Below, one piece after another: positions 3,109 to 59,491 of a DNA stretch of 64,000 bases (its first letter is position 1; every line of letters begins with the position of its first letter). Where the stretch lies: sequence record LR756502.1. The stretch is one strand, 5' to 3'. A model generated the notes under the pieces. That model did not search any database. It saw only the letters and a program-made list of their open reading frames with translations, and was not told where the DNA came from. The translations under genes were made by a program, and so were the position numbers.

Positions 3109-3369
3109 ATGAAAAACGTATTTAATTTTGCAGACTTTGTTAACGAGGAACTAAAAAAACTCCCAACTACTTATAACTTCAAGAGTGAATCTGAAGATAA
3201 AAAACATGATAAACTAGCTTCTAAAAAGAAGGAAGGTCATATCTGGAAAAAGACTGTTAGTAAACACGGTAAAGAATCTAAGACTGAGAATTTTTCTTGT
3301 GAGTGTGGATATAAGAAGAAGGTTGAAAATGATGAGAATAAGAATGTTACAATTACTTATTCAAAATAA
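3109..3369 (+). CDS. Hypothetical protein with N-terminal tag variant (MKNVFNFADFVNEE)
   Basis: ORF behind TAATATATA. Confidence 0.6.
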   Translation: MKNVFNFADFVNEELKKLPTTYNFKSESEDKKHDKLASKKKEGHIWKKTVSKHGKESKTENFSCECGYKKKVENDENKNVTITYSK

Positions 3370-3393
3370 TTAGGATAAAATAAAAACAATTAG

Positions 3394-3401
3394 TATATTT
3401 G
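3394..3401 (+). promoter_or_regulatory. Bacteroidota sigma-A -7 element TAnnTTTG (representative copy)
   Basis: Also at 5603, 16798, 20897, 36526, 49897, 54202, 58860, 61975 and others, often with TTTG about 20 nt upstream. Confidence 0.8.
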
Positions 3402-3419
3402 TAATATAAATAAGAAGAA

Positions 3420-3555
3420 ATGAAAACAACTATTAAAAATACAAGTTCACGTAGTCGCTCGAGTAAATCGGGTGAGGTTCGACTGTATTCATAATAGTTA
3501 GTATAAACATATTGTGTAAACCCTCGAACTTAACCGTTTGAGGGTTTTTTGTTTT
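3420..3555 (+). promoter_or_regulatory. Attenuator 2: leader MKTTIKNTSSRSRSSKSGEVRLYS (3420-3494) + terminator (3518-3555)
   Basis: Ser x7, Arg x3; GGTTCGA (3476-3482) pairs with TCGAACT (3524-3530); followed by Arg/Ser tRNAs. Confidence 0.8.
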
Positions 3556-3560
3556 AAAAT

Positions 3561-3632
3561 GGCTTCATCGTCCAATGGATAGGACACTCCGCTACGAACG
3601 GAGAAATTTGGGTTCGAGTCCCTATGAGACTA
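3561..3632 (+). tRNA. tRNA-Arg(ACG)
   Basis: CTCCG-CTACGAA-CGGAG. Confidence 0.85.
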
Positions 3633-3708
3633 CAAATGAATATCACAGGAGAGTGTATTAAGTTGCAACCCGCGTAAATTGTGAAGGACAATCTGTGATA
3701 TTCAAATT

Positions 3709-3792
3709 GGAAGAGTAATTAAGCTGGCGCTTGACCTAGTCTTGAAAACTAGCGGTACCTACGGGTATGGGGATCGATACCTCACTCTTCCA
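3709..3792 (+). tRNA. tRNA-Ser(UGA)
   Basis: CTAGT-CTTGAAA-ACTAG, V-arm. Confidence 0.85.
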
Positions 3793-3797
3793 CAAAT

Positions 3798-5259: not shown

Positions 5260-5595
5260 ATGAGTATTAAAAAATTTGAAAATTTTGAAGATGAATTTGA
5301 TGGAGAAGGAGTTGATAAAAGTGAGATTACTATGAAGGTTGCTGATACATCTACTTCACAAGAAGAATGGCAACAATATATGGCTCAGGATGGAGTTACA
5401 CTTCTTGTCTCAGCTTGGTATACAAATGCACAATATATGGTTGATTCTGAATTGTCTTTTATTTATCCAGAGTTGGAAGAAATAGAAGGATTGTATGACC
5501 TACAAGAAGGGTGTATGGAATATTCAGGACCCTTAACTGCCCAACAAATGGTTGATGAATTAATTAGATTAGGATTTAATGCGGTAATTGAATAA
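5260..5595 (+). CDS. Acidic hypothetical protein with N-terminal tag (MSIKKFENFE)
   Basis: ORF track; shared N-terminal motif. Confidence 0.6.
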   Translation: MSIKKFENFEDEFDGEGVDKSEITMKVADTSTSQEEWQQYMAQDGVTLLVSAWYTNAQYMVDSELSFIYPELEEIEGLYDLQEGCMEYSGPLTAQQMVDELIRLGFNAVIE

Positions 5596-10767: not shown

Positions 10768-10995
10768 TTATAGACTTTCTATTTTATCTTTTATCTTCTT
10801 AATTACTGAGAACATTTTACCAAAGTATTCAAATCTTTCCTCCTCAGTCATGTGTTCCCAATTGTCCCACTCATCACCAAAATATTCCTGTTCTGATATA
10901 TTCCATCTCATCTCAGGGAGACTAGATACTAAATCTTTTAACTCATCTATATCATTGCCTGATACGCCTTCATTGAATTTATTCAAATGTTTCAT
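10768..10995 (-). CDS. Hypothetical protein with N-terminal tag (MKHLNKFNE)
   Basis: Shared N-terminal motif; TAATATATA upstream. Confidence 0.65.
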   Translation of the reverse strand: MKHLNKFNEGVSGNDIDELKDLVSSLPEMRWNISEQEYFGDEWDNWEHMTEEERFEYFGKMFSVIKKIKDKIESL

Positions 10996-11005: not shown

Positions 11006-11488
11006 TTAATTTTTTACTATATTAATTCTATTACCACCATAGTAGTCTAGTCTATATCCCGGTATAGGATTTCTCTCCAAATATCTAACATACATACTTG
11101 TTCTCTGTGTTACATATTGCCTTTCTTTCTCCTTTGCTAAACCAACCATTGTTATTTTCTTAACAAATGGTTTTCTTTTAATAAAGTCATTTAGAATCTC
11201 TCCAAATATAGTTTTTAGAATCCTATATGGATTAACATTTACTACTTTAGAGACATCATAGTAATCTTTAGATTCATCATATACAAAGTAGCATACTTCA
11301 TACTCTGTAATTAATTCACCTTTTTTTGGTTTTAAATTCCTAATTCCTTTGAACTCAACGAGGTATTTATTACCTTCATTATCTAAAAATTCATATCTAA
11401 CTTTCTTATTATCATCATTGATCAATTCCCATTGATAGGAATCAACTGATTCAAATAATAAGTCGTATATCGAATTTAAATACTTCAT
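11006..11488 (-). CDS. Hypothetical protein with N-terminal tag variant (MKYLNSIYDLLFES)
   Basis: ORF track. Confidence 0.6.
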   Translation of the reverse strand: MKYLNSIYDLLFESVDSYQWELINDDNKKVRYEFLDNEGNKYLVEFKGIRNLKPKKGELITEYEVCYFVYDESKDYYDVSKVVNVNPYRILKTIFGEILNDFIKRKPFVKKITMVGLAKEKERQYVTQRTSMYVRYLERNPIPGYRLDYYGGNRINIVKN

Positions 11489-11505
11489 ATTTAATATATA
11501 TTAAA

Positions 11506-12339
11506 ATGATTAAACTTAAAACATACGAGGAGTTTAACTGGTCACCGGAAAGTAGCACCATAGCTGGATACGTATTTTCATTACTCGCTGCTAAAATAGG
11601 ATCAAAACTACTTCTAAAAAAGAAGGAAAGAGATAGTGTAAAGAAGATGATGAAAAATTCTATATACACAACATCCTCTAAATGGCTAATATCTGAAACC
11701 GGAGATTTGATAAACATATCTAATATAGATACAAAGAGGGTTTTTACTATTGATAAGAAAAATAGAACGATTGAATATAAGTCGGAAATTTATCCACTAA
11801 AAGCAAAATTAAATAAAAATGATATAACAGAAATAGTTGATAGTGTTTATTTTGCTAAAGATGTCTCTGAGTCAATAGATGATTGTTTCTATGATTTAGT
11901 CGATGAGGGATTTACTGTAACTCTTATATCCCTTAATTTTACTAAAAAAGCCTTTGCTATAAAAATAACACTGAAAGGTGATAGAGAAAGTTGGGGTAGA
12001 GATAGGACTATACCTATTCATCAAATAGGAGTTCAATTAAATGAGACTTTGCAAAAAATAATTGGACAGTATGATGTTGTTGTGGATGATTTACCTGGAG
12101 TAAATGATCTTACTCAGAGATATGGTGTAAGGTCTGTTCCTGATGATGGGTATATAGTTACTGAATATAAAGATGGGGTTATTAAAATTATCCCATTTAA
12201 TAGTGACCGAGATGTTGTTCCTGTATCATCATTAATATCTACTGACATTGATCTAATGGATATGCCTAATATATGGTCAAGTTTTGGTAAAGGTATACCA
12301 CAATTAAAGGCTCTTACAATACCATTTATAAAGAAATGA
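11506..12339 (+). CDS. Hypothetical protein with N-terminal tag (MIKLKTYEEF)
   Basis: ORF track. Confidence 0.65.
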   Translation: MIKLKTYEEFNWSPESSTIAGYVFSLLAAKIGSKLLLKKKERDSVKKMMKNSIYTTSSKWLISETGDLINISNIDTKRVFTIDKKNRTIEYKSEIYPLKAKLNKNDITEIVDSVYFAKDVSESIDDCFYDLVDEGFTVTLISLNFTKKAFAIKITLKGDRESWGRDRTIPIHQIGVQLNETLQKIIGQYDVVVDDLPGVNDLTQRYGVRSVPDDGYIVTEYKDGVIKIIPFNSDRDVVPVSSLISTDIDLMDMPNIWSSFGKGIPQLKALTIPFIKK

Positions 12340-12761
12340 AATATATAAAGACATTTGAAAATAATAAGCCCACGAAACAGTTGATTATAGATCAGTTGAA
12401 TTCTATAGTTGATGATGCTTTTGCTACTATAGAAGATGATGGATTTGAGATGGAACAAGGGCATAAGGGAACTAGAAATTGGGATATTGTTAGGGTATAT
12501 ACTAGACTTAATATAAAAGGTATTAATAGACTTCATTTTGTTGGCGAAGTTACTGGTGAGCATTGGAAAATGGCCACCTTTATTCCTTGTAAAATTAAAT
12601 ATGAAACATGTTTTAACTTAAACCCGGAGATGTATGATGATATTATAAAAGATGTTGAAAATGCTATGATTATGATATCTGGATTATCTGGGTTGAGTTT
12701 CAGCTTTAGCTTTACTAATTTCTATGGACAAGACAAAATTATATTTCAATTAAGAGTATGA
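12336..12761 (+). CDS. Hypothetical protein with N-terminal tag (MKYIKTFEN)
   Basis: ORF track. Confidence 0.65.
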   Translation: MKYIKTFENNKPTKQLIIDQLNSIVDDAFATIEDDGFEMEQGHKGTRNWDIVRVYTRLNIKGINRLHFVGEVTGEHWKMATFIPCKIKYETCFNLNPEMYDDIIKDVENAMIMISGLSGLSFSFSFTNFYGQDKIIFQLRV

Positions 12762-13222
12762 TGTATATAAAAACATATGAGAATTTCGATAATATTTTAT
12801 ATAGTATTGTTGGTGGATCAAAAGAGAACTTTGAGTTCTTGTCAAATTTTGATGCAATTCCTAGTATTGAATCATACCTAAGTAGCCCAAGAATTAAAAT
12901 TGTTGAAGCTAGATTAAATGATGAATTAATAGCATGTTCTATGTTTGTATTGAAGGAGAACTCAGTTCATCTTAATTATACCTTTGTTATTGATTCATAT
13001 AGAAACAAAGGAGTTAACCAAGGTCTAAAGAAAACTCTTGTGGATTGGTGTTCAAAAAACGGATATGCGAAAATTACTTGTAATGTAAGAGAGAGTAATA
13101 TACCATCTCTATCATCCTTGATTAAGTCTGGATTTAATATTAATACCAACTATAATGATTTGAAATACCCAGATGGAGAAAAGAAAATACCACTTTACTA
13201 TGAAGTATCTAAGAACATATGA
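12758..13222 (+). CDS. GNAT acetyltransferase with N-terminal tag (MMYIKTYENF)
   Basis: TFVIDSYRNKGVNQGL, NVRESNIPSLSSLIKSGF. Confidence 0.8.
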   Translation: MMYIKTYENFDNILYSIVGGSKENFEFLSNFDAIPSIESYLSSPRIKIVEARLNDELIACSMFVLKENSVHLNYTFVIDSYRNKGVNQGLKKTLVDWCSKNGYAKITCNVRESNIPSLSSLIKSGFNINTNYNDLKYPDGEKKIPLYYEVSKNI

Positions 13223-13769
13223 GGGATTTGATCACCTATCAGAGAGAGGTATTGATCCGAAGAGAACTTATTTTGTGCATGATGAAGAGTCTAATAATAC
13301 TTATTTCTTTCTATATAATCTAAGTGGTATTTGTGTTGGTTATCAGAAATATAATCCTGATAATGAGAAGGCTGGTGGTCTTGGTTGGATGGGTAGATAT
13401 TTTACAAAGGCTAATAAAGAAGCAACTGGTCATACTAAAATAGCTGTATATGGTCTGGAGACATATCAATTAGATAAAGACTATTTCTTTGTCGCAGAGG
13501 GTATATTTGATATAATTAAAGTTCATAATACTGGAGAGCCAGGAATTGCAAACCTTGGTTGCTCTCTATCTAATCAAGCTAAGAATTGGTATATGAGTCT
13601 GTCTCAAAAGAAAATTGTTATACAAGATAGAGATGATGCTGGTACCGAACTTGGATCAATTGGTGATTATATTTATACCGTTCCTGAACCATATAAGGAT
13701 CTTGGTGAAATGCCACAGTCTGAAGTAAATGAATTTATTAGAAATATTAAGAGTGAACTAGGAATTTAA
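13200..13769 (+). CDS. Toprim/primase-like protein with N-terminal tag (MKYLRTYEGF)
   Basis: FVAEGIFD, IQDRDDAG, YKDLGE; likely start ATG 13200. Confidence 0.65.
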   Translation: MKYLRTYEGFDHLSERGIDPKRTYFVHDEESNNTYFFLYNLSGICVGYQKYNPDNEKAGGLGWMGRYFTKANKEATGHTKIAVYGLETYQLDKDYFFVAEGIFDIIKVHNTGEPGIANLGCSLSNQAKNWYMSLSQKKIVIQDRDDAGTELGSIGDYIYTVPEPYKDLGEMPQSEVNEFIRNIKSELGI

Positions 13770-20221: not shown

Positions 20222-20593
20222 TCATTCCCACCTCTCTAATTTTTTTATTATTCTAATTTTAATCGAATATACTCGATCGAAATTAGAATAGTTTGATTCT
20301 GGGTAGAAATTTATCTTCATTCCTATAAATCTTTCCAGACTATCCTTTATTCCTTTTAAGTAATCATGTATATCCCTTTGTTCTGACCAAGTAAGGTTTT
20401 CGATATTTATACCACAATATTTTTGAAGAATTGCGTATTCCGCCCAGTATTTATATTGTGGTTTCTCATTCGTTAATCCTTTATATCTTACTATATCATA
20501 CTTATCAAAAATGTCTTGGATATAGTCAATCATATTATCAAGTGAATTTGAATCTAATATCTCAAATAATTTAAATTCTTTAAGATATTTCAT
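20222..20593 (-). CDS. Hypothetical protein with N-terminal tag (MKYLKEFKLFE)
   Basis: Shared N-terminal motif. Confidence 0.6.
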   Translation of the reverse strand: MKYLKEFKLFEILDSNSLDNMIDYIQDIFDKYDIVRYKGLTNEKPQYKYWAEYAILQKYCGINIENLTWSEQRDIHDYLKGIKDSLERFIGMKINFYPESNYSNFDRVYSIKIRIIKKLERWE

Positions 20594-23899: not shown

Positions 23900-24258
23900 A
23901 AAACAATATTGTACTTTATATCAAATGATCTATCTCTTAGATGTACATTTAGCTTTAGATTTTTAATAAAATCGGGCTTTACAATAAATGTATTCTTCTT
24001 AGTTAGCTTTAGGTAGTTGTTAATAAACATATCTGGATTATCAACCTTTTTTGATAAGTCCATTTTTAACACATCAATACCTTTTGGATCTTTATTATAG
24101 TTAGCAATGGTATCAACTATTGCTAACTTTTTTTGATCATCTTTTATTTCCTGTGCCTGAACCTTACTTATACCCAGACCTAGTAAGGCTGAAAGAAGTA
24201 GTGTTTTAATATATCCCACTTCTTCATTTACGAAGTCATTATATTTTTTTATTATCAT
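23896..24258 (-). CDS. Hypothetical protein with N-terminal tag (MIIKKYNDFVNEE) and hydrophobic segment
   Basis: ORF track. Confidence 0.55.
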   Translation of the reverse strand: MIIKKYNDFVNEEVGYIKTLLLSALLGLGISKVQAQEIKDDQKKLAIVDTIANYNKDPKGIDVLKMDLSKKVDNPDMFINNYLKLTKKNTFIVKPDFIKNLKLNVHLRDRSFDIKYNIVF

Positions 24259-46410: not shown

Positions 46411-46564
46411 CCCTCGGATAAAAATTCGAGGGTTTTTGTTTAAAAGAATTAATATATAACCTATGAGACACATGAAAAAATTTAATGCCCTCGGATAAAA
46501 ATTCGAGGGTTTTTGTTTAAAAGAATTAATATATAACCTATGAGACACATGAAAAAATTTAATG
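46411..46564 (+). repeat. Perfect 77-bp tandem duplication (terminator + TAATATATA + MRHMKKFN start)
   Basis: 46411-46487 identical to 46488-46564. Confidence 0.9.
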
Positions 46565-47028
46565 AAAATGAAGTGAACTTTAGTGGGTATGAGCCGACTG
46601 TAGTTTATTATGGTTTTTTTAATGGTGGTGATGGGTCAGTTTTTCTTAGATGGTATTTAGATCCTGATATGGCTTCTGATGAAGAGGAATCACAATCTGA
46701 AGGTTGGGGAGAGGATTGTACTGGATCAGTGGAGACATTTGTTGGATCTGATATACATAAAGATGCCGTTAAGAATGACTTAAAGATTAAGAATGATCCT
46801 AGTAGAGCTATCATTGAAGAGATGTCAAACATTACTGATGTTCAAGAGATTGAAGATTGGGTAGATAAATATGTAGAATCTTCCTATGATAAGAATAAGG
46901 ATGGTGTTAATCAAATAAGAAATAAAAGGATAGAGTCTAAATATAATTTATCTAGATTAATAGATAAAATTAAATCTCCTAGTGTAAAGGGTAACTGGAG
47001 AACAGTAATTAGAAATACAAGTAACTAA
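46540..47028 (+). CDS. N-terminal-tag protein (MRHMKKFNE)
   Basis: First gene of tagged array. Confidence 0.65.
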   Translation: MRHMKKFNENEVNFSGYEPTVVYYGFFNGGDGSVFLRWYLDPDMASDEEESQSEGWGEDCTGSVETFVGSDIHKDAVKNDLKIKNDPSRAIIEEMSNITDVQEIEDWVDKYVESSYDKNKDGVNQIRNKRIESKYNLSRLIDKIKSPSVKGNWRTVIRNTSN

Positions 47029-47460
47029 ATGAAACACTTAAAGAAATATAACGAATCAACAAGCCATCCAGCACCATATACTTGGGATGAGCTTATTTAT
47101 AGAATAGACTCAGGTGAATGTAAATTACCACCAAGTAAATATAGTCCAATGGATGAAGTTAAATCTGATGTAATTGAATCTATTAAGGAATATCTAAAGA
47201 TGAATTCAAAAAGATTTCCGGATATGAATACTGAGCCAATTGAGGATCCAAAAAGAATTATAGATGGTATAGCTGAAGTTGGTGGAAATTTTGTTGCAGT
47301 ATTTGATGATGATTTAGCACCGATTGCACTAATAACTGAATATGATATGATGAACCCTTTCGTGTTTGGTACTGTTGTTATTGTACCAGGTCGTGATTCA
47401 ATTACTTGTTATGATAAATCAACAGGTGAATTTAAAAGAGAACGTAGAAAAAGAGTATAG
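47029..47460 (+). CDS. N-terminal-tag protein (MKHLKKYNES)
   Basis: Shared motif. Confidence 0.65.
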   Translation: MKHLKKYNESTSHPAPYTWDELIYRIDSGECKLPPSKYSPMDEVKSDVIESIKEYLKMNSKRFPDMNTEPIEDPKRIIDGIAEVGGNFVAVFDDDLAPIALITEYDMMNPFVFGTVVIVPGRDSITCYDKSTGEFKRERRKRV

Positions 47461-47467
47461 ATAAATT

Positions 47468-47953
47468 ATGAAACACTTAAAAAAATATAACGAGTCTGTA
47501 TCTGGTTCTAGAGAAGAATTAGTTAGGGATATAAATGCTATGTTTAAGTTTCATAGCAACTATATCTGTGGAATAGAATTCGATCTAAATAATATCGATG
47601 AGATAAATGATGAAATAGATGAGAATTTAATACCATCTAAATTTAGAGATGCTGCTGGATTCACAGCAGAAGAGAACTGTGAGAGAAGAAAGCAAGAAAT
47701 TAAAAGTCTATTCCTTAAATATAAAGGATGGATATTTGATAATAAAGAATCCTTGGGTGATAGTAAACACGATGGTGATTGGCATGAGTTCACGATTGAG
47801 ATAACTGACCCAGAAGGTAATATCTATATTGGTAGAGGTGATACTTGTCCAGCTGAGTCTCCACAAATCAATGAGATATCTGATAATGATGAAGAGAGAG
47901 ATAAAGCATATAAGAAGTATCTTAAGCTAAAAAAGAAATGGAATTTCAACTAA
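47468..47953 (+). CDS. N-terminal-tag protein (MKHLKKYNES)
   Basis: Shared motif. Confidence 0.65.
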   Translation: MKHLKKYNESVSGSREELVRDINAMFKFHSNYICGIEFDLNNIDEINDEIDENLIPSKFRDAAGFTAEENCERRKQEIKSLFLKYKGWIFDNKESLGDSKHDGDWHEFTIEITDPEGNIYIGRGDTCPAESPQINEISDNDEERDKAYKKYLKLKKKWNFN

Positions 47954-47954: not shown

Positions 47955-48308
47955 ATGAAACACTTAAAGAAATTTAACGAAAATAAAATGGATGGACTGC
48001 AATTTACAATTGATGACTTTGAAGATGTGATGCAACTTCAATGGGAGAAATACAAAGGACTTGAAAAGTTATACAAAATAGTTGATATTGAAGTAGAAGA
48101 TACTGATATAGGTAAAGGCATAATAAATGCTAATGCTATTATAGAAAGACTATCTGATGGTAGATTTTTCAAATTTGAATACTCTCATGATGAGGGAAGA
48201 AATCCATTGAGTATAGGAGGATTGGCAAATCCAAGAACTATGATAGGAGTAGAAGTATATCCACATACAGTTACAAAGGTTGTATATAAAACAAAACCAA
48301 AAAGGTAA
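47955..48308 (+). CDS. N-terminal-tag protein (MKHLKKFNE)
   Basis: Shared motif. Confidence 0.65.
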   Translation: MKHLKKFNENKMDGLQFTIDDFEDVMQLQWEKYKGLEKLYKIVDIEVEDTDIGKGIINANAIIERLSDGRFFKFEYSHDEGRNPLSIGGLANPRTMIGVEVYPHTVTKVVYKTKPKR

Positions 48309-48310: not shown

Positions 48311-48487
48311 ATGAAATACTTAAAGAAAATTAACGAAGGTAATGATACTTACTTTGAGTATGATGTAAATGATACATCTACTTATAAAGGTCGAGATGTT
48401 GGTAAAATGATAAAAGACGTCTTAGATGCACTGAACATTGACTATACTAAGGATGATAATGAAGTCTTATTTTGGGTATCTTGGTAA
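48311..48487 (+). CDS. N-terminal-tag protein (MKYLKKINEG, 58 aa, not in ORF track)
   Basis: Read manually; shared motif. Confidence 0.6.
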   Translation: MKYLKKINEGNDTYFEYDVNDTSTYKGRDVGKMIKDVLDALNIDYTKDDNEVLFWVSW

Positions 48488-48526: not shown

Positions 48527-48874
48527 ATGAAACACTTAAAGAAAATTAACGAATCTAGTAATTATAAAAAACAAAATGACCTATTTATAAATACTAGAGT
48601 TATTGATGTTAGTAATATTAGAGATACTAATATCAGAGATATTATTTATAAATATGCTGAGAATAGAGTTCGTTCAAATAATTCATACTTTAAATACTAT
48701 GTTTGTGATACCGCTAAACACATATCCGAGGTTAAGGATATTAACAATATAATAAGATTTCCTAACCATAATCCTGATTATGTTTATGAAAGAGGAGATG
48801 ATCCTATAAGTGATTTCCTACTGGATAATGGTGCTAAACTATCAGAATCACTTATATTCTTAATAAATTGGTAA
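48527..48874 (+). CDS. N-terminal-tag protein (MKHLKKINES)
   Basis: Shared motif. Confidence 0.65.
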   Translation: MKHLKKINESSNYKKQNDLFINTRVIDVSNIRDTNIRDIIYKYAENRVRSNNSYFKYYVCDTAKHISEVKDINNIIRFPNHNPDYVYERGDDPISDFLLDNGAKLSESLIFLINW

Positions 48875-48876: not shown

Positions 48877-49437
48877 ATGAAACATCTAAAATCATATAAC
48901 GAGTCCGTTCAAGATGAAGAAGATGAGAAAGGTGACCGTATAGAAGTGCATCTTACCGTTCCTGTTTTCTCTGGTACTCCACTTAATCGTAAATGGACGA
49001 CATTTTTTTCATGCAGAAGGTCTAAGACTAATGATAGAGGACAATATGAAACAGTTGGTGGTTATGATGAACTCGAATTAAGATATTTTGATATTGTTTG
49101 GGAGAAATATGAAGGCAAAGAGATGCCTAATCGAGATATGAAGGGTGGTAGATTTAGTGGACTACTTGGTTATAAGGGTCCATGTAGACCAGAGTTTGAA
49201 GTATATCCTAAAGAGTTAATAGATGCTTTGTCTTATTTTGAAAATAGTTCATTTGTTACTGAATTTGAAAAAGGATTAAAGAAGAGATACTTTTCAAAAA
49301 GTAGTGGTGAGATAGACCCATTTCCTGATAAAGAAGAAATATCTAAAATGTCTCTGGAGTTTCAAAGTGAAGAAGATGCTTTTGATTGGTTAAATGATTT
49401 AGAATATCTTATTATTACCAACAAAATAGACTCATAA
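48877..49437 (+). CDS. N-terminal-tag protein (MKHLKSYNES)
   Basis: Start moved to the tagged Met. Confidence 0.65.
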   Translation: MKHLKSYNESVQDEEDEKGDRIEVHLTVPVFSGTPLNRKWTTFFSCRRSKTNDRGQYETVGGYDELELRYFDIVWEKYEGKEMPNRDMKGGRFSGLLGYKGPCRPEFEVYPKELIDALSYFENSSFVTEFEKGLKKRYFSKSSGEIDPFPDKEEISKMSLEFQSEEDAFDWLNDLEYLIITNKIDS

Positions 49438-49440: not shown

Positions 49441-49860
49441 ATGAAACACTTAAGAAGATTTAATGAAAGTCTAGAAGGTAATCTAGAAGAGATAAATGAT
49501 ATATTTACAGTTGAAGTTGCTGATCATTTTAATTTAGTTAGAATATCATATGACGAATATAATGGTCAGGCTGAGGGTGGTGGACCACTTGAAAGAAATA
49601 AATCAACAGATCCATCAATTTATTACATTGAAGACTACTTTAGTCGGCCTGAACTAGATCCGGTAGGATTTGTAAGAATAGAAATGGCTATAAGTAATGA
49701 CAATGCTGAATTATTTAAATTAAAATATTTATCACTATTTGAGGAAAGATTATCAAAAATAGGATTTAAAATGAGTGTAAAGTATTATTACGGTAAGGTA
49801 AGTGGTAGAATATTCAGACGAAATTTTACCGAGGTAACTATGATAATAGAAGCACTATAA
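49441..49860 (+). CDS. N-terminal-tag protein (MKHLRRFNES)
   Basis: Shared motif. Confidence 0.65.
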   Translation: MKHLRRFNESLEGNLEEINDIFTVEVADHFNLVRISYDEYNGQAEGGGPLERNKSTDPSIYYIEDYFSRPELDPVGFVRIEMAISNDNAELFKLKYLSLFEERLSKIGFKMSVKYYYGKVSGRIFRRNFTEVTMIIEAL

Positions 49861-53030: not shown

Positions 53031-53552
53031 ATGAAACATTTAAAAATATTTGAAGATTTTGAATATAAATCAATAACACCTGATGAGTTAAAAGGCTTGG
53101 TTGTTAAAAGAATATATCATAGTAGTAACGGATCATCTATTGTTGAGACAGATAAAGGTATATTTGATGTTGGTTGCATGGGTGGTGCTATGATATCATT
53201 TGAAGGCAGTTTAAGTATTGAAGAGGTTGTAAATAGAACAATAATTGACGTTTTGATGGAAGAAGGATCGATAACTCTAGTATTTAGTGATGGTGAAATT
53301 TCTTTTGTAGATGATACTGGTGGTGAAGGAGTTTCAGCTGATTGGGTAAATGAATCTAATGATTCAAAAATTGAGGACATTGAATTAAAAATTAAAGATG
53401 CTGCTTATAGTTTGAAGACATTTGGGACTATGAATAAACAAGGAGCTTTTATAAATGGTGCTAAATGGGCTATTCACAATTTAACAGATGAAGAGATAAA
53501 ATATATGAGAGAGAGCTCAGATTCGGAAGATCATAGTTTCTTTGGACTTTAG
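53031..53552 (+). CDS. N-terminal-tag protein (MKHLKIFEDF)
   Basis: Behind TAATATATA. Confidence 0.65.
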   Translation: MKHLKIFEDFEYKSITPDELKGLVVKRIYHSSNGSSIVETDKGIFDVGCMGGAMISFEGSLSIEEVVNRTIIDVLMEEGSITLVFSDGEISFVDDTGGEGVSADWVNESNDSKIEDIELKIKDAAYSLKTFGTMNKQGAFINGAKWAIHNLTDEEIKYMRESSDSEDHSFFGL

Positions 53553-53567: not shown

Positions 53568-53885
53568 ATGAAACATTTAAAAAAATTTAATGAGTCTGAA
53601 ACTTGGTCAAGTGGTATTTCACTTGATGATGTAATTGAGTTTATTCATCCTTCAAATCCTATGGATTCACAAGAGTACTATTATTATATATGGGCTGATG
53701 ATGAGGTTTACTATGAATTTGCAAAATTGAAGGTACGTGATTATATGGATGTGATTAATCGTACAGTTTTCAAAGAAGAATCAAATACAGCTAAAAAGTT
53801 TGGTTATGATTTTATTATGACTAATCAAGAAGAGATATTAGATAAGTGTGAGGAATATTTAATATCTGATGGAGTTAGAAAATAA
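53568..53885 (+). CDS. N-terminal-tag protein (MKHLKKFNES)
   Basis: Shared motif. Confidence 0.65.
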   Translation: MKHLKKFNESETWSSGISLDDVIEFIHPSNPMDSQEYYYYIWADDEVYYEFAKLKVRDYMDVINRTVFKEESNTAKKFGYDFIMTNQEEILDKCEEYLISDGVRK

Positions 53886-53894: not shown

Positions 53895-54161
53895 ATGAAA
53901 AATATTAAAACATTTGAATTATTTAGTGATTGGTTTAAGTCTAAGGAACAAAATGCTCGTGAGGAGATGTTTGGTACAAAAAACTTAGAAAAAAAATCAG
54001 AAGATGTTCAGAAACTAATAGATGAGATAATACTAAACCAAGGTACTAGTTTAGATCACAGAAATGATAGATTTAAAGTGTATAGTGACGTAGAGTTATC
54101 AAATATGTCCGATGATGAAATTACTAGTATTTGGCAGCAAATAACTGGGAATAGGTATTAG
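53895..54161 (+). CDS. N-terminal-tag protein (MKNIKTFELF)
   Basis: Shared motif. Confidence 0.6.
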   Translation: MKNIKTFELFSDWFKSKEQNAREEMFGTKNLEKKSEDVQKLIDEIILNQGTSLDHRNDRFKVYSDVELSNMSDDEITSIWQQITGNRY

Positions 54162-55878: not shown

Positions 55879-56259
55879 TTAGTGTTGATGATCCAGTACT
55901 TCTATTAGTGTTGATTCACGCCTTTCGTCTAGAGTTTTAATGTTCTCAATGAAGATGTAATTAAACTCAATTATATCATTAAACTCAGTTCTTATTGTGC
56001 TAAAGTATTCAAATGATTCCGCCATCTTGACGTTATCAAAATGAAGACCACTTAATATCATAAAGTTTATTGATTTATAGTTTCCGGTGCCATTGACTTT
56101 ATCATCTGATTGACTAACAAATAATTCTGATGAGTATGTAATTTTAATAGTATTTCCTTGTGTAATATGTACATGTAAAATTTTGCTAAATTTTGGACAT
56201 CTTAATGTTGTTAATCCATAGTAGTTAATGGGTATTGATGATGTATTTATGTAGCTCAT
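55879..56259 (-). CDS. Hypothetical protein with C-terminal tag variant (RRESTLIEVLD)
   Basis: ORF track. Confidence 0.5.
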   Translation of the reverse strand: MSYINTSSIPINYYGLTTLRCPKFSKILHVHITQGNTIKITYSSELFVSQSDDKVNGTGNYKSINFMILSGLHFDNVKMAESFEYFSTIRTEFNDIIEFNYIFIENIKTLDERRESTLIEVLDHQH

Positions 56260-56904
56260 TCAGAAAATATGTATTTATATTTATTATATATATCTTTATA
56301 TAGATAAGTTTAGGTATAATATATCTTGTGAAAATATTTTTTATAAAAATATCCCTTTGTTTATATGATACTTGAGTGGTGGTGAGGATGTCAAATTGGA
56401 TATTTTTTGTTATATTTGTAAAAATAGTTATATTTGTATGTTAAATTGTTTATATAGAATAAAATTTGGTAAACTATCCTCTGAGTTAAACGAAGAGTAT
56501 GATAGACTCTCTGATTATGAAAAGGAAAAAATATCAGATATTGATGCTGAAAGTTTCTTCGATTGTGATGATGAGAGTTCTGGTAGTTACTTTTGTTATA
56601 TAATTACTGATCCTATGGAGATGAAATCTTACTTATCTATATTAGATTCCAATTTAATAAGAGTTAAGTGTGATAACTTATCAAATGACATAATTAGCAA
56701 TAGAATAAATTTAGAAAAAGAATTAAAATCTCAGGTTAGTGCATTAAATTCAGTGAAGTATAGTTTCTTCATTGATGATGTAAAGGACTGGATATATAGA
56801 AACCTATCAATTGATACTGTTCTTGATAGGATATCAGAATCCGGTATGGATTCACTAACAGATGTAGAACTATTATTTTTAACCAATCTTAATAATTAAA
56901 ACCA

Positions 56905-57330
56905 ATGAATATTTACTTAGACGACTTGAGAGTTCCAAGTATGTCTCATAATAAGGACAAGGGACTTGGATATGCTTACTCATTTGAGTCTAAGTGGGTA
57001 ATTGTACGCGACTACTTTGAATTTGTTGAATTGATTAATAGTGATTTTGATAAAATAAATTTGATATCATTTGATCATGATTTAGCTTGCTTCAAAAAGT
57101 CACACGGTATTCGTGAGGAGTTTACTGGTAAAAGTGCGGTAGATTATTTAATAAACTTTTGTTTAGATAATAATAAAAAGTTTCCAGACTGGTATGTTCA
57201 TACTGATAATACCTCTGGAAGAGGAAATATTATTGGAGCAATACTTAACTATATGAAAGTTATAGAAGGGTATGATACTACCAATTTTAGATATTATAAT
57301 AGTGGTATATTTAATAATAAAATAATATAA
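56905..57330 (+). CDS. Cyclic-phosphate-processing receiver-like protein
   Basis: IYLDDLR.P, WVIVR, ISFDHDL, TG..A..L, VHTDN. Confidence 0.7.
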   Translation: MNIYLDDLRVPSMSHNKDKGLGYAYSFESKWVIVRDYFEFVELINSDFDKINLISFDHDLACFKKSHGIREEFTGKSAVDYLINFCLDNNKKFPDWYVHTDNTSGRGNIIGAILNYMKVIEGYDTTNFRYYNSGIFNNKII

Positions 57331-57652
57331 TGGCTAATTTTATAACATTACATATGGTTGGTAAAATATTTGATACCGTTAGGGTTAAGCAAAGAGCTCT
57401 AGGTCATGATGGATTCCTATATTTTAATGAGGTAATTGGTGCTGGTAAAATAAGAATTAATCGAATAAACTCTTATTTTCCTTATGAAAAAGAACAGATA
57501 GTGCCAACAAGTCTTAACTCTCTTAGAGGAGATGCCTTGATGGAGATATATGATAAGTTAAACTCTAATGAGTTTTATGTATATAAGAAGATAGATGGTA
57601 GGGATTGTAAAATGAGATTGAAATTTATACCAAGAATACCAAAATAATAATT

Positions 57653-58402
57653 ATGTTTGAGTTGGGTGATGTTGATTTTAAATATTCTGGTGTTGAGTAT
57701 GACTACCGGACCGAAAACTCTTGCGTTGAAAGTGGGTGTGATTCTATTTGTAGGTGTGGTGTTATAGTTGATGAGTGTGTTATTGGTGTAGATGTTTCTA
57801 TTCTATCTAATGAGATATATAATATGTATTTTGATAATTCAAAGTTAACTAAGAGAAATAATACAATAAATTCAATTCTTTATGGGACTGGTGAGGAGTT
57901 AGACAGATACTGTATTGATCGTATACTTAGAAGTCACAAGGTTTGGTTATCACATAATTGGGATATAGTGGTTGAAGGTGGTTATTATGGTCAGGAAATT
58001 GGTCATGTGAGACTTGAATCCAGAGTATCTAGTAAAATACAGGATGATATCAACGAAGTAATATCAATAAATACAAATGCTGGTAAAGTTGAGTTTGTTC
58101 TTAACCTTGAGTATGGATACATACTTCCTGAACTAGATGGATGTAATTATGAAATAGTTGATATTGATGTTAATAGTATTATCTTTGGTAGTATTGGTCA
58201 ATATAAAAAGGTACAAAGTGAGAAACTTGAACATTATATTGATATAAAATATAGTGGGCCAAGAGGTGTTGTGAAGAAAGACGGTGATAAATATAAGATA
58301 ATAGATGGGTATCACAGAATATATGCTGCTGGATTGACTAATAAAAATAAAGTTGGTGTAAATTTGATTAGAGTAATACTTGTTAAAGATGAAATTTTAT
58401 AG
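57653..58402 (+). CDS. Protein with C-terminal ParB/Srx-like motif
   Basis: YKIIDGYHRIYAA. Confidence 0.55.
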   Translation: MFELGDVDFKYSGVEYDYRTENSCVESGCDSICRCGVIVDECVIGVDVSILSNEIYNMYFDNSKLTKRNNTINSILYGTGEELDRYCIDRILRSHKVWLSHNWDIVVEGGYYGQEIGHVRLESRVSSKIQDDINEVISINTNAGKVEFVLNLEYGYILPELDGCNYEIVDIDVNSIIFGSIGQYKKVQSEKLEHYIDIKYSGPRGVVKKDGDKYKIIDGYHRIYAAGLTNKNKVGVNLIRVILVKDEIL

Positions 58403-58853
58403 CCACGGAAGTACAATTGGAGTTACCCTTTCTGGTTGGTTAGGTGTTCTAATATTGGTATATATAACTCTTGAGTGTTTGAGTATATTTATCTCTCACA
58501 CAACATTATTTCGTAGGACTTATCTATATTTTAAGCTAAGGAAGAAAGTTTCTAAAATTTTACCAGTTTGGTGGGAATTAGAATATGTTAGTTTTATTGC
58601 AATATCTAGAGCGAGCAGTCACACTGATAGGTATGTAGTTTATTTAAAAATTGTATCTAAAATATCACCATGTTGGATGGATAAAAAATCTTGGACAAAT
58701 GCCTTTATTTTTGTTGATAAAAATGGAAATATTGTAAACAAGTATGAGTTATTAAGAAGAACTGAGTTAGGTGACAGGGTAAATCAGGTAACTGATGAAA
58801 TGATAAATCAGTATGTTAGAGATAAATCACTAACTGATTTAGGAATCAAATAA
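58389..58853 (+). CDS. Membrane protein with C-terminal tag (VRDKSLTDLGIK)
   Basis: N-terminal TM helix. Confidence 0.55.
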   Translation: MKFYSHGSTIGVTLSGWLGVLILVYITLECLSIFISHTTLFRRTYLYFKLRKKVSKILPVWWELEYVSFIAISRASSHTDRYVVYLKIVSKISPCWMDKKSWTNAFIFVDKNGNIVNKYELLRRTELGDRVNQVTDEMINQYVRDKSLTDLGIK

Positions 58854-58894
58854 ATTCCGTATCTTTGTAAAGATTGTAATTTAATAAATACAAT

Positions 58895-59491
58895 ATGAAA
58901 ATAAAAAAATTTAATCAATTTAATTCATCTGAATGGATAGGACCTCTTGAGATTCTTGATATAAAAGATGATATGGTTTATACCAACTTTGGTACATTTA
59001 CCAATAAATCAGGTTCTAGATTAACTAAGGGGTATTCATACTTATTAAGGATTATCGATGATGAAGTTGTTGAAACTGGAATGAGTTGTGTTGACTTAGT
59101 TATCCTTGTTAGAAATGGTAGTGGATATAAAATACTATCTATCAAGAGAGGTCATCCACCATTCGTGGGTATGTGGGCCAACCCAGGTGGTAACATTGAT
59201 GAGGGTGAAAAGCCGGTTGATGCTGCTGTGAGAGAACTAGTAGAAGAAACTGGACTGAAACTTGATAAAAGTGAGTTACATTATGTTGGTATGTTTGATA
59301 AACCATTCAGAGATCCACGAAATAAAAATTGCGTATCCTATGCTTTTAGAGTTATATTGGATGATTATCCAGATGTAACGGCTGGTGATGATGCTACAGA
59401 ATGTACTTGGAATGATGTTGATTCAGATGGAAGTATTAAAGTAGAAATGGCATTTGATCACGCTGAAATAATAAAAAAATCAATTCAATGA
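58895..59491 (+). CDS. Nudix hydrolase with N-terminal tag (MKIKKFNQF)
   Basis: GGNIDEGEKPVDAAVRELVEETGL; RDPR; AGDDA; MAFDH. Confidence 0.9.
   Translation: MKIKKFNQFNSSEWIGPLEILDIKDDMVYTNFGTFTNKSGSRLTKGYSYLLRIIDDEVVETGMSCVDLVILVRNGSGYKILSIKRGHPPFVGMWANPGGNIDEGEKPVDAAVRELVEETGLKLDKSELHYVGMFDKPFRDPRNKNCVSYAFRVILDDYPDVTAGDDATECTWNDVDSDGSIKVEMAFDHAEIIKKSIQ

What the first reader, a model, noticed from the sequence alone, without database searches (positions are those of the whole stretch)
3109..59491. About 25 unrelated proteins share an N-terminal MK(H/Y)(L/I)K(K/T)(F/Y)(N/E)E tag resembling the T4 capsid-targeting sequence
Examples: MKHLKKFNES, MKYIKTFEN, MIKLKTYEEF, MKYLRTYEGF. The sequences diverge completely after residue ~10, and most lie behind TAATATATA. 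Established: T4 internal proteins use a 10-aa CTS (MKTYQEFIAE) that is cleaved after Glu by the prohead protease. Inference: a large packaged and injected effector set, including a GNAT, a Toprim protein and a Nudix hydrolase.
Basis: partly seen in the sequence, partly recalled or inferred. Interest (0 to 1): 0.72.

Follow-up and report, generated by a model that had tools for sequence, protein, structure and literature searches.

The report
Shared N-terminal tag on late phage proteins
In a 642-kb uncultured phage of Bacteroidota, about one gene in six starts with the same 9-12-residue peptide (MKHLKKFNES and variants). The peptide is selected as protein, occurs only in late operons, and most likely directs the proteins into the T4-like prohead, but no virion data exist to prove this.

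Summary
The window is positions 372001-436000 of LR756502.1, a 642-kb "Mahaphage" with a predicted Bacteroidota host.

- **Extent:** 22 window ORFs carry the tag, plus 4 degenerate cases. Genome-wide it is 165 of about 965 genes, against 0.5-1.2 expected by chance.
- **Unrelated bodies:** one 43-member family aside, the tagged proteins fall into more than 100 unrelated groups.
- **Selected as protein:** in orthologues, synonymous change in the tag equals the rest of the gene, while amino-acid change is 7-fold lower.
- **Virus-specific:** a 27-nt degenerate pattern gave no hit at an ORF start in 596 Gb of cellular genomes, against 80 in IMG/VR.
- **Detachable:** the tag is disordered in an AlphaFold model. 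One orthologue group has it behind the late promoter and lacks exactly it behind a host-type promoter.
- **Late operons:** tags lie almost only in operons driven by (T/A)AATATATA, which also precedes the portal, protease, capsid, terminase and sheath genes (odds ratio 26, p=4e-20). Those core proteins and the housekeeping enzymes are untagged.
- **T4-like context:** the phage has gp20, gp21 and gp23 homologues. The tag matches the T4 capsid-targeting sequence in layout (hydrophobic at 4, aromatic at 7, hydrophobic-x-Glu cleavage motif) but not in sequence.

The capsid-targeting reading is the best explanation (about 0.5) but is unproven.

The parts
5260..5595 (+). Tagged ORF, 111 aa, MSIKKFENFEDEF (shortened variant); host-type TATATTTG promoter upstream
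   Evidence: PSSM 11.7; one of only 3 tagged genes in host-type units
10768..10995 (-). Tagged ORF, 75 aa, MKHLNKFNEGVSG; TAATATATA 4 nt before the ATG
   Evidence: PSSM 20.5; upstream sequence; no Pfam hit
11489..11505 (.). 17-nt spacer ATTTAATATATATTAAA between two divergent start codons; overlapping TAATATATA motifs serve both strands, 5-6 nt from each ATG
   Evidence: Sequence read; implies leaderless or nearly leaderless mRNAs
11506..12339 (+). Tagged ORF, 277 aa, MIKLKTYEEFNWS; first gene of a four-gene tagged operon
   Evidence: PSSM 14.4; TAATATATA 5 nt upstream
12336..12761 (+). Tagged ORF, 141 aa, MKYIKTFENNKPT; operon-internal
   Evidence: PSSM 12.6; no Pfam hit
12758..13222 (+). 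Tagged GNAT acetyltransferase, 154/153 aa, M(M)YIKTYENFDNI
   Evidence: PF00583 9.4e-8, domain from residue 43; homologue P0002 also starts MKYIKKLNEN
13200..13769 (+). Tagged ORF, 189 aa, MKYLRTYEGFDHL; weak Toprim_2 match
   Evidence: PSSM 19.7; PF13155 6.5e-4, below cut-off
20222..20593 (-). Tagged ORF, 123 aa, MKYLKEFKLFEIL
   Evidence: PSSM 21.0; no Pfam hit
23896..24258 (-). Tagged ORF, 120 aa, MIIKKYNDFVNEEVGYIKTLLLSALLGLGI; tag followed by a signal/TM-like segment; TAATATATA 4 nt upstream
   Evidence: PSSM 14.4
28000..28521 (+). Tagged ORF, 173 aa, MKHIKKFDSYSINEE; TAATATATA 4 nt upstream
   Evidence: PSSM 16.9
33641..34111 (-). Tagged ORF, 156 aa, MKYLRKFNESSIY; TAATATATA 4 nt upstream
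   Evidence: PSSM 20.6
46488..46539 (+). Intrinsic terminator (CCCTCG-N10-CGAGGG-TTTTT, 46488-46514), then TAATATATA (46527-46535) 4 nt before the ATG at 46540
   Evidence: Sequence read
46540..47028 (+). Tagged ORF 1 of an eight-gene array, 162 aa, MRHMKKFNENEVN
   Evidence: PSSM 17.7
47029..47460 (+). Tagged ORF 2 of the array, 143 aa, MKHLKKYNESTSH
   Evidence: PSSM 25.8; no Pfam hit
47468..47953 (+). Tagged ORF 3 of the array, 161 aa, MKHLKKYNESVSG
   Evidence: PSSM 26.3
47955..48308 (+). Tagged ORF 4 of the array, 117 aa, MKHLKKFNENKMD
   Evidence: PSSM 21.6
48311..48487 (+). Tagged ORF 5 of the array, 58 aa, MKYLKKINEGNDT
   Evidence: PSSM 16.3
48527..48874 (+). Tagged ORF 6 of the array, 115 aa, MKHLKKINESSNY
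   Evidence: PSSM 20.7
48877..49437 (+). Tagged ORF 7 of the array, 186 aa, MKHLKSYNESVQD (ATG start; the longer TTG ORF from 48868 is not used)
   Evidence: PSSM 22.8
49441..49860 (+). Tagged ORF 8 of the array, 139 aa, MKHLRRFNESLEG
   Evidence: PSSM 23.7
53031..53552 (+). Tagged ORF, 173 aa, MKHLKIFEDFEYK; TAATATATA 4 nt upstream; heads a three-gene tagged operon
   Evidence: PSSM 22.5
53568..53885 (+). Tagged ORF, 105 aa, MKHLKKFNESETW
   Evidence: PSSM 26.7
53895..54161 (+). Tagged ORF, 88 aa, MKNIKTFELFSDW
   Evidence: PSSM 18.4
58895..59491 (+). Nudix hydrolase, 198 aa, MKIKKFNQFNSSE (one-residue-shorter tag); host-type TATCTTTG upstream and TAATAAATA 5 nt before the ATG
   Evidence: PF00293 3.5e-17, domain 69-176; PSSM 20.3; promoter class
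3109..3369 (+). Degenerate tag, 86 aa, MKNVFNFADFVNEE; TAATATATA 4 nt upstream
   Evidence: below the PSSM threshold
11006..11488 (-). Degenerate tag, 160 aa, MKYLNSIYDLLFE; shares the bidirectional promoter at 11489-11505

Best explanation
**What it is.** The peptide M-[KR]-[HY]-[LI]-[KR]-x-[FY]-[NEK]-... ends in a hydrophobic-x-Glu motif within residues 8-12. I read it as a detachable N-terminal address label for cargo of the T4-type prohead, a functional analogue of the T4 capsid-targeting sequence (CTS).

**How it would work.**
- The genes are transcribed late, from the same (T/A)AATATATA promoter as the head and tail genes. Often the promoter sits 4-7 nt from the ATG, so the mRNA has essentially no leader.
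- The label, mainly the hydrophobic residue 4 and the aromatic residue 7, would bind the scaffolding core. Here that core is the repeat-rich C-terminal part of the gp21-like protease-scaffold fusion.
- The protein is enclosed as the gp23-like shell forms.
- The gp21-like protease would then cut after the Glu, freeing the mature protein inside the head.
- The protein would be injected with the DNA at the next infection.
- The cargo would be a very large arsenal of small, mostly unknown proteins plus enzymes: GNAT, SET, methyltransferase, HNH, Rnl1-type RNA ligase, lysozyme, Nudix.

**Shown.** The motif and its statistics; protein-level selection; modularity; restriction to viruses; restriction to late operons; absence from core structural and housekeeping proteins; the T4-type head genes.

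**Inferred.** Binding to the core, cleavage, packaging and injection.
For: 1. **Motif.** It is real and composite: 165 of about 965 genes with a bimodal score distribution.
2. **Selection on protein, not RNA.** Synonymous codons in the tag follow genome codon usage. In 21 tagged orthologues of gene B, the share of codon pairs with a synonymous difference is 0.184 in the tag and 0.156 in the body. The share with an amino-acid difference is 0.068 against 0.461.
3. **Virus-specific.** There are 80 exact matches to a 27-nt degenerate pattern in IMG/VR. There are 2 in 596 Gb of cellular genomes, neither at an ORF start.
4. **Modular.** More than 100 unrelated bodies carry it. The linker to the first conserved element of the big family varies from 5 to 50 aa. 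In the AF2 model, residues 1-7 have pLDDT below 50 while the body scores 90 and starts at residue 12. Fifteen distinct gene-B orthologue sequences start exactly where the tag ends.
5. **Late class.** The motif (T/A)ATATATA precedes the portal, protease, capsid, terminase, sheath and baseplate-hub genes. Tags occur in 145 of 491 genes in late units and 3 of 192 in host-type TAnnTTTG units (odds ratio 26, p=3.7e-20).
6. **Expected absences.** Portal, protease, capsid protein, sheath, hub, terminase, four aaRS, RNR, Rnl2 and others are untagged.
7. **T4-type machinery.** gp17 4e-48, gp20 2e-27; gp21-like protease phrog_207 6e-28 with GEFDHP and VSSRAAG; gp23-like phrog_138 2e-23.
8. **Layout matches T4 CTS genetics.** In T4, targeting depends on residues 4 and 7 and processing on 8 and 10 (PMC9026906). 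Here positions 4, 5 and 7 are the most conserved after the start Met. Glu occurs within residues 8-12 in 92% of tagged proteins against 28% of untagged. P3 is hydrophobic in 127 of 160, and P1' is mostly S, E, N, D, G or A.
9. **Same kind of site elsewhere in the head.** The capsid protein's N-terminal domain ends in an invariant ...H[SQ]INE|NAY. This is the last Glu before the conserved core, and the site is kept as hydrophobic-x-E|N/D in distant relatives. The scaffold part has about 13 repeats ...YSEY[IL]AE|N, compared with T4 ...EFIAE|A.
10. **Natural swap.** Gene B is either late promoter plus tag (25 loci) or host-type promoter without tag (20 loci) in the same place next to the portal gene. 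Made late and injected, or transcribed early, are two equivalent ways of having a protein present at the start of infection.
11. **Scale is not absurd.** Heads of giant phages hold about 50 (SPN3US, 240 kb) to 89 (201phi2-1 virion) protein species.
Against: - There is no virion proteome, no N-terminal mapping, and no cultured phage with the tag.
- The T4 CTS scores -12 and -11 on the tag model, so the link is by layout only.
- PTm1, the closest cultured relative with the same protease-scaffold and capsid genes, has no tag in the 50 kb examined. The tag is therefore not a necessary part of this head type.
- 165 cargo species, a third of the late genes, is an order of magnitude beyond T4.
- Tagged proteins are mostly acidic (median pI 5.4), unlike T4's internal proteins, which are described as basic (PMC9026906).
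- A few have a signal- or TM-like segment after the tag. Some are 400-800 aa. One is an Rnl1-type RNA ligase and one is a lysozyme that could be the lysis enzyme.
- In about a fifth of tags the first Glu lacks a hydrophobic P3.
- The gene-B swap is probably a single evolutionary event.
- 'Late' rests on shared promoters, not on expression data. A gp55-like sigma factor was not found by phmmer.
Confidence: 0.5

Rival explanations
1. The tag is a protein-level signal of late proteins with a destination or partner other than the capsid interior. Examples are recognition by a phage chaperone or modifying enzyme, timed degradation (an N-terminal degron), or recruitment to an assembly site, the tail, or a membrane.
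For: Everything that shows a selected, modular, virus-specific, late-class peptide fits this equally. The very large number and mixed nature of the tagged proteins are easier to accept if they are not all squeezed into a head. They are acidic, some are membrane-anchored, and they include an RNA ligase, a lysozyme and proteins of up to 797 aa. A second peptidase gene lies in the head module (phrog_4191).
Against: No candidate receptor is identified. The layout (residues 4 and 7, hydrophobic-x-Glu) and the similarity of the tag's end to the capsid protein's predicted maturation site point specifically to the gp21-type system. The absence of the tag from sheath and hub argues against general virion or tail targeting. 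A degron would not explain why early-promoter orthologues drop it.
Confidence: 0.27
2. The tag is the footprint of a mobile 5' cassette consisting of late promoter, ATG and about 9 codons. New genes are captured or shuffled through it. It is comparable to the promoter-stem-loop cassettes that flank novel ORFs in T4-type phages (my recollection, not checked here). The peptide itself has little or no function.
For: Promoter and tag are gained or lost together in gene B. Of genes with the promoter 4-10 nt from the ATG, 53% are tagged. Tagged genes cluster in arrays of fast-evolving small ORFs.
Against: About half of the tagged genes are operon-internal and have no promoter of their own: 72 of the 79 with no motif within 32 nt. 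In orthologues the tag has diverged at synonymous sites as much as the gene body, yet is 7-fold more conserved in amino acids. That is selection on the peptide, not recent copying. Nucleotide identity between tags is too low to drive homologous recombination.
Confidence: 0.1
3. The motif reflects constraints on translation initiation in a host without Shine-Dalgarno pairing. These could be an A/U-rich unstructured 5' coding region, leaderless mRNAs, or a favourable nascent peptide.
For: The genes have no Shine-Dalgarno sequence. The tag is built from amino acids with A/T-rich codons. Many tagged genes have the promoter 4-7 nt from the ATG, so their mRNAs are leaderless.
Against: The order of residues matters, not only composition (shuffle test 1.2 against 67). 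Synonymous sites are free. Substitutions are conservative in amino-acid terms (K/R, L/I, F/Y). Operon-internal genes carry the tag too. The proteins expected to be most highly expressed among late proteins (capsid, sheath, portal, scaffold) lack it. No hit at an ORF start in 596 Gb of cellular genomes, which include Bacteroidota, matched the pattern.
Confidence: 0.04
4. All tagged proteins are diverged members of one gene family, and the tag is simply its best-conserved segment.
For: One real family exists: 43 tagged members plus 7 with a degenerate tag or none. They share IKDILLDLxDDGF after the tag.
Against: None of the window's tagged proteins belongs to it. The other ~122 fall into more than 100 groups and include unrelated Pfam folds: GNAT, Nudix, SET, HNH, methyltransferase, lysozyme and RNA ligase. 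The spacing between the tag and the family motif varies from 5 to 50 aa.
Confidence: 0.03

Closest known systems
Capsid-targeting sequence (CTS) of T4 internal proteins IPI, IPII, IPIII (MKTYQEFIAE, cut by gp21)
   Same: Both are about 10 residues at the extreme N-terminus of otherwise unrelated proteins. Both start M-K, have a hydrophobic or aromatic residue at 4 and an aromatic at 7, and end in hydrophobic-x-Glu followed by a small residue. The phage has homologous portal, gp21-type protease and gp23-type capsid protein. The bodies are fast-evolving and variable between related phages.
   Different: There is no sequence match (PSSM -12). The basic residues at 5-6 contrast with Q-E in T4. There are three length variants, with Glu at position 8, 9 or 11. 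The set is 165 proteins per genome against 3 in T4. The cargo is mostly acidic. Many genes are leaderless behind a different late promoter motif. Function is untested.
Propeptides of head, inner-body and ejection proteins of giant phages phiKZ, 201phi2-1 and SPN3US
   Same: Large heads carry tens of different internal proteins, many in paralogous families. A gp21-related protease cuts after Glu (PMC9026906, PMC7411985).
   Different: To my knowledge those propeptides share little beyond the short cleavage motif. Here one short, fixed, N-terminal consensus is reused on more than 100 unrelated proteins.
N-terminal packaging determinants of phage P1 Dar and other head-internal proteins
   Same: Anti-defence proteins are packaged into the head and injected. 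The P1 virion paper (PMC9024508) uses the term capsid targeting sequence.
   Different: From my knowledge, not checked here, the P1 determinants are individual and depend on an ordered assembly pathway. They are not a common consensus tag.
Mobile promoter cassettes (PeSL) that flank novel ORFs in T4-type phages (recalled, not checked here)
   Same: A standard 5' regulatory module is associated with hypervariable small ORFs. Here promoter and tag are exchanged together in gene B.
   Different: PeSLs are early promoters plus stem-loops and work at the DNA level. Here the conserved part extends into the protein and is selected as protein.

Membership tests
T4-type capsid-targeting sequence (CTS) | Short peptide at the extreme N-terminus shared by proteins that are otherwise unrelated | tested here: met
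   165 genes. After trimming 13 aa, 120 clusters by phmmer, of which 109 are singletons. Pfam folds differ.
T4-type capsid-targeting sequence (CTS) | Targeting determinants at residues 4 and 7 (hydrophobic or aromatic), as shown by T4 IPIII mutagenesis | tested here: met
   Position 4 is L/I in 93% and position 7 is F/Y in 89% in non-circular tests. These are the most informative positions. T4 data come from PMC9026906. This is a match of pattern only, not of function.
T4-type capsid-targeting sequence (CTS) | Ends in a prohead-protease site, hydrophobic-x-Glu followed by a small residue | tested here: inconclusive
   Glu occurs within residues 8-12 in 92% of tagged against 28% of untagged proteins. 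P3 is hydrophobic in 127 of 160. P1' is S, E, N, D, G or A. The site resembles the capsid protein's predicted site INE|N. Cleavage itself is not shown, and a fifth of the tags lack a hydrophobic P3.
T4-type capsid-targeting sequence (CTS) | Phage builds a T4-type prohead: gp20 portal, gp21 protease, scaffold core, gp23 shell | tested here: met
   phmmer gp20 1.6e-27 and gp17 4.4e-48. Protease phrog_207 6e-28 with GEFDHP and VSSRAAG, fused to a repeat scaffold. Capsid protein phrog_138 2.4e-23.
T4-type capsid-targeting sequence (CTS) | Sequence similarity to MKTYQEFIAE | tested here: not met
   T4 IPII and IPIII score -12.0 and -10.8 on the tag matrix (threshold 7.6). Only M1, K2, F7 and the general pattern are shared.
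T4-type capsid-targeting sequence (CTS) | Made when proheads assemble (late expression) | tested here: inconclusive
   The same promoter motif precedes the portal, protease, capsid, terminase, sheath and hub genes. 145 of 165 tags are in such units and 3 are in host-type units. Timing is inferred from promoters; there are no expression data.
T4-type capsid-targeting sequence (CTS) | Tagged proteins are present in the head, processed, and injected; the tag is sufficient to package a foreign protein | not testable with these tools
   There is no cultured member and no proteome. See next steps.
Sec, lipoprotein or T9SS export signals | Hydrophobic core of about 10-20 residues after a basic N-region (Sec/lipoprotein), or a C-terminal sorting domain (T9SS) | tested here: not met
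   The tag is followed by polar or acidic residues. Only 3 of 165 have a strict hydrophobic segment within residues 11-80. A genuine signal peptide plus CHU_C protein in the window (43688-46384) has no tag.
Single paralogous gene family | Detectable similarity beyond the shared N-terminus | tested here: not met
   This is true for one family of 43-50 members, none of them in the window. It is not true for the other ~122.

The most novel reading that the evidence does not exclude
The tag marks the packaged-and-injected proteome of the largest known phages. More than 150 different proteins per genome, a third of all late genes, would be made late, loaded into a T4-type prohead through one 9-12-residue address label, trimmed by the prohead protease, and delivered with the DNA. 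Much of the 'early programme' of these phages would then arrive as ready-made protein. Genes would move between the two modes, transcribed early or made late and injected, by swapping a promoter-plus-tag cassette, as seen for the gene next to the portal gene. The injected proteome would then be readable from sequence alone in hundreds of uncultured genomes.
Probability: 0.4. Interest if true: 0.9.

Novelty: new variant of a known kind. Interest (0 to 1): 0.78.

Why it matters
**Why it matters if the tag is a capsid address.**
- It gives a sequence-only way to list the proteins that huge uncultured phages inject. These are a very large, fast-evolving set of likely host-takeover and anti-defence factors that nobody can reach by culture at present.
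- It would extend the T4 CTS principle from three proteins to a proteome-scale system.
- It offers a ready-made packaging tag for engineering protein delivery in phages of Bacteroidota.
- It would explain part of what the extra coding capacity of 0.6-Mb phages is for.

**What stands even if the destination is different.**
- A selected, virus-restricted N-terminal label on 17% of a proteome is unusual.
- It is tightly tied to one promoter class and to leaderless transcripts.
- I found no paper that describes it.
- It turns the question 'what do the hypothetical proteins of huge phages do?' into one that simple experiments can address.

Tried and rejected
- **Chance or composition.** Rejected by the internal-rate, internal-Met and shuffled-N-terminus controls and by the half-motif cross-prediction.
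- **Nucleotide-level signal.** Rejected by codon usage in the tag, by the synonymous against non-synonymous comparison in orthologues, and by the absence from cellular genomes.
- **One gene family.** Rejected for all but 43-50 proteins.
- **Cultured relative with proteomics.** tblastn of a conserved tagged family found only another MAG. The capsid protein search led to PTm1, PAU, MA9V and others. PTm1's last 50 kb has no tag and only one TAATATATA, so no proteome could be used.
- **Other huge-phage MAGs.** The 50-kb head regions of LR756501, LR756500 and LR756504 hold only 1-2 tags each, and the one Lak-A2 hit is doubtful. Whole genomes were not scanned.
- **Literature.** No paper contains the strings MKHLKKF and related forms. 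The paper that reports the 642-kb genome, a 2026 jumbo-phage review, and searches on megaphages mention no such tag.
- **Function of tagged proteins.** Most have no Pfam or PHROG hit. Three had no PDB sequence match. The AF2 model of gene B had no PDB match, and in BFVD it matched only uncharacterised phage proteins.
- **GNAT homologues.** The search gave only 4 sequences, too few for a model.
- **T4 late sigma factor.** gp55 and the clamp gp45 were not found by phmmer; gp44, gp46 and gp47 were. This is no evidence either way for a T4-type late transcription system.
- **Two cellular-genome hits.** The hits in an archaeal MAG and a Carnobacteriaceae genome are not at ORF starts.

Full report
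**Provenance.** The window is identical to positions 372001-436000 of LR756502.1, an unannotated 642,428-bp 'uncultured phage' record. Its length matches the 642-kb genome of Al-Shayeb et al. 2020, one of their four largest complete genomes. The genomes above 634 kb in that study belong to the Mahaphage clade and are predicted to infect Bacteroidetes (PMC7162821). The window agrees with this. It has 31-37% G+C, no Shine-Dalgarno sequences, 44 tRNA genes, four aminoacyl-tRNA synthetase genes, and a protein with a signal peptide and a CHU_C type IX secretion domain. I fetched the rest of the record in pieces so that the motif could be judged against the whole genome.

**The observation.**
- A position matrix built from the clearest cases, with its threshold set at a 0.2% false-positive rate on internal-Met decoys, marks 165 of about 965 genes.
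- The scores are bimodal, with one peak near -14 and another near +18.
- Twenty-one of these genes lie in the window. The GNAT at 12758-13222 is a one-residue-shorter variant, and four more are degenerate.
- Three length variants recur: MKHLKKFNES, MKHLKxYKIFES and MKYIKTFE.F.
- The strict pattern occurs at 67 gene starts. The expectation is 0.5 from its internal frequency and 1.2 after shuffling residues 2-12 within each N-terminus. Only 2 of 3686 internal Met residues carry it.
- Genes chosen by residues 2-5 alone have F/Y at position 7 in 89%. Genes chosen by residues 7-9 alone have K/R at position 2 in 89% and L/I at position 4 in 93%.

**Are the bodies unrelated?** After removing 13-14 residues, BLASTP and phmmer leave 109 singletons among the 165 proteins.
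- There is one true family of 43 tagged members, plus 7 with a degenerate tag or none. It is defined by IKDILLDLxDDGF, which lies 5 to 50 residues after the tag.
- None of this family's members is in the window.
- The tagged set includes unrelated Pfam folds: GNAT (two), Nudix, SET, SAM methyltransferase, HNH, phage lysozyme and T4 Rnl1-type RNA ligase.
- The 'Toprim' claim rests on a sub-threshold match.

**Protein or nucleotide?** Synonymous codons at tag positions follow the genome's usage.
- The best test uses orthologues. A scan with the protease N-domain found 369 close relatives in IMG/VR.
- In 21 tagged orthologues of the gene just upstream of the portal gene ('gene B', rec 222007-222480), the share of codon pairs with a synonymous difference is 0.184 in the tag and 0.156 in the rest of the gene. 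The share with an amino-acid difference is 0.068 against 0.461.
- The peptide is therefore under strong purifying selection, and the RNA sequence is not.
- A 27-nt degenerate pattern for MKH-L-KK-[FY]-NE gave 80 matches in IMG/VR, typically with several other tagged ORFs in the same stretch.
- The same pattern gave only two matches in 596 Gb of bacterial and archaeal genomes, neither at an ORF start.
- The tag is therefore not a general optimum for translation in the host phylum.

**Modularity.**
- Fifteen distinct gene-B orthologue sequences lack the tag and begin exactly at the residue where it ends: M[KN]YSTY... against MKHLRKFEEL[ND]YSTY....
- All 25 tagged copies lie behind (T/A)AATATATA. 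All 20 untagged copies lie behind a Bacteroidota-type TAnnTTTG promoter. The gene occupies the same place next to the portal gene in both.
- The two untagged loci examined in full still use ATATATA before their portal and protease genes, and several such loci have other tagged genes.
- An AlphaFold2 model built on 36 orthologues is confident (pLDDT 90, pTM 0.81). Residues 1-7 fall below 50, and the fold begins at residue 12.

**Promoter class.**
- TAATATATA or a one-base variant lies 20-30 nt upstream of the portal, protease, capsid, terminase and sheath genes and of a peptidase gene. It lies 8 nt upstream of the baseplate-hub gene. I therefore take it as the late promoter.
- Other genes have host-type TAnnTTTG motifs.
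- I assigned each gene to the nearest promoter of its same-strand run. Tags then occur in 35% and 24% of genes in late units (own or inherited promoter), against 3% and 1% in host-type units. The odds ratio is 26 and p is 3.7e-20.
- When the motif is 4-10 nt from the ATG, 53% of genes are tagged.
- In the window, a 17-nt spacer (11489-11505) between two divergent start codons carries overlapping motifs for both strands. These mRNAs can have at most a few nucleotides of leader.
- An intrinsic terminator, the promoter, and then eight tagged genes in a row form the unit 46488-49860.
- Seventy-two of the 79 tagged genes with no motif within 32 nt are operon-internal. The tag is therefore not a property of leaderless messages only.

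**The head genes.**
- T4 proteins read from AF158101 find a gp17-like terminase (4e-48), a gp18-like sheath, a gp20-like portal (2e-27) and a gp21-like protease.
- The protease (rec 225272-227371, phrog_207 6e-28) keeps the GEFDHP and VSSRAAG motifs that align with T4 GELNHP and VSSRGLG.
- It is fused to a long region with about 13 repeats NLDKNI.YSEY[IL]AE.
- The next gene is a gp23-like capsid protein (phrog_138, 2e-23).
- Its N-terminal domain ends in ...AE[FY]H[SQ]INE|NAYVNASNVAGMG, invariant in 71 orthologues. This is the last Glu before the conserved core.
- Distant relatives keep hydrophobic-x-E|N/D at this position: HQMNE|N, HELYE|N, HQIHE|N, Lak KLNE|D, PTm1 TINE|N.
- None of these core proteins carries the tag. 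Neither do the aaRS, RNR, Rnl2, M28 peptidase, cytidylyltransferase or SDR proteins of the window.

**Comparison with the T4 CTS.**
- T4 IPII and IPIII start MKTYQEFIAE|A.
- The first 10 residues suffice for packaging. Residues 4 and 7 matter for targeting, and residues 8 and 10 for processing (PMC9026906; PMC3012670).
- The Mahaphage tag has its most conserved residues at 4 (L/I), 5 (K/R) and 7 (F/Y).
- It has a Glu within residues 8-12 in 92% of cases, against 28% of untagged proteins. P3 is hydrophobic in 127 of 160, and P1' is small or polar.
- The common ending [FY]-N-E|[SN] resembles the capsid protein's I-N-E|N.
- The layout therefore matches in register, but the sequence does not. The T4 CTS scores -12 on the tag matrix.

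**Interpretation.** The most economical reading is a CTS-like address label for prohead cargo, probably removed by the gp21-like protease.
- The gene-B swap fits this reading. A protein needed at the start of infection can either be transcribed early from a host-type promoter, or be made late, packaged and injected.
- The large number of tagged proteins is the main difficulty.
- Heads of giant phages are known to hold tens of protein species: about 50 in SPN3US, and 89 in the whole 201phi2-1 virion.

**Points against.**
- There is no proteome.
- The tagged proteins are acidic.
- A few are membrane-anchored.
- Some are large.
- An RNA ligase and a lysozyme have obvious cytoplasmic or lytic roles.
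- PTm1, with the same head genes, has no tag in the 50 kb examined.

I therefore put the capsid-targeting explanation at about 0.5. A different protein-level function for a late-protein label is at about 0.27. A functionless promoter-start cassette is at about 0.1. The nucleotide-level and single-family explanations are at a few percent each.

**Novelty.** Full-text searches for the peptide strings and for related terms, the paper that reports the 642-kb genome, and a 2026 review of jumbo phages turned up no description of this tag. I file it as a new variant of a known kind, the CTS principle. It has a new consensus, a proteome-wide scale, and a tight link to a late, often leaderless, promoter. 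It is not a member of the T4 CTS family by sequence.

Noticed in passing
window 11489-11505 (also rec 25109-25134 and 79801-79817 of LR756502.1): A 17-nt spacer ATTTAATATATATTAAA between two divergent start codons carries overlapping TAATATATA motifs for both strands, 5-6 nt from each ATG. Both transcripts must therefore be leaderless or nearly so. This is a bidirectional palindromic late promoter.
   Followed up: partly
window 46488-49860: An intrinsic terminator (CCCTCG-N10-CGAGGG-TTTTT) is followed by TAATATATA 4 nt before the ATG and then by eight tagged genes packed head to tail, whose bodies are mutually unrelated. It looks like a dedicated 'cargo operon'.
   Followed up: partly
window 1174-1930, 3561-4193, 17161-19227, 29555-32505, 50131-51370, 63101-63174: There are 44 tRNA genes in five clusters, grouped by amino acid. 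Several are 85-89 nt long (Lys, Glu, Tyr, Gln), which suggests introns or long arms. One call at 63101-63174 has a 2-nt 'anticodon'.
   Followed up: no
window 2257-2976, 36566-38038, 51398-52999, 54363-55640: There are four aminoacyl-tRNA synthetase genes: a Trp/Tyr-type of only 239 aa, GluRS, GlnRS and an Asn/Asp-type. None is tagged. The short Trp/Tyr-type enzyme lacks the C-terminal part of the Pfam model.
   Followed up: partly
window 43688-46384: An 898-aa protein has a Bacteroidota-style signal peptide and a C-terminal CHU_C type IX secretion sorting domain. This phage protein is presumably exported to the host surface by the host's T9SS.
   Followed up: partly
window 4226, 40580, 63266, 58895, 5260 (upstream regions): A second promoter class, the host-type TAnnTTTG (-7 element of Bacteroidota), precedes other genes. 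Genome-wide its operons are almost free of tagged genes (3 of 192).
   Followed up: yes
window 15933-16487 (-) ; rec 543467-544270: GIY-YIG (plus HTH_7/NUMOD3) homing-endonuclease-like genes sit directly behind TAATATATA without a tag.
   Followed up: no
LR756502.1 225272-227371 (outside the window): The prohead protease is fused to a scaffold-like region with about 13 tandem repeats NLDKNI.YSEY[IL]AE. Each repeat ends in a T4-like [IL]-A-E site. PTm1 has a different repeat (..KELSEGIEKWI..) at the same place.
   Followed up: partly
LR756502.1 10-80 kb (outside the window): About 50 paralogues share tag, variable linker, then IKDILLDLxDDGF. They fill much of the first 80 kb almost wall to wall. 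They have no Pfam or PDB match.
   Followed up: partly
window 7718-8431 and LR756502.1 491690-492961: The phage has two RNA ligases. An Rnl2-type (PF09414) in the window is untagged. A T4 Rnl1-type (PF09511) elsewhere is tagged.
   Followed up: no
L116, L132, L135, L146, L148 and 10 other IMG/VR loci: A sub-lineage of close relatives has replaced the late promoter plus tag of the gene next to the portal gene with a host-type promoter and a plain ATG. The rest of the head module is unchanged.
   Followed up: yes
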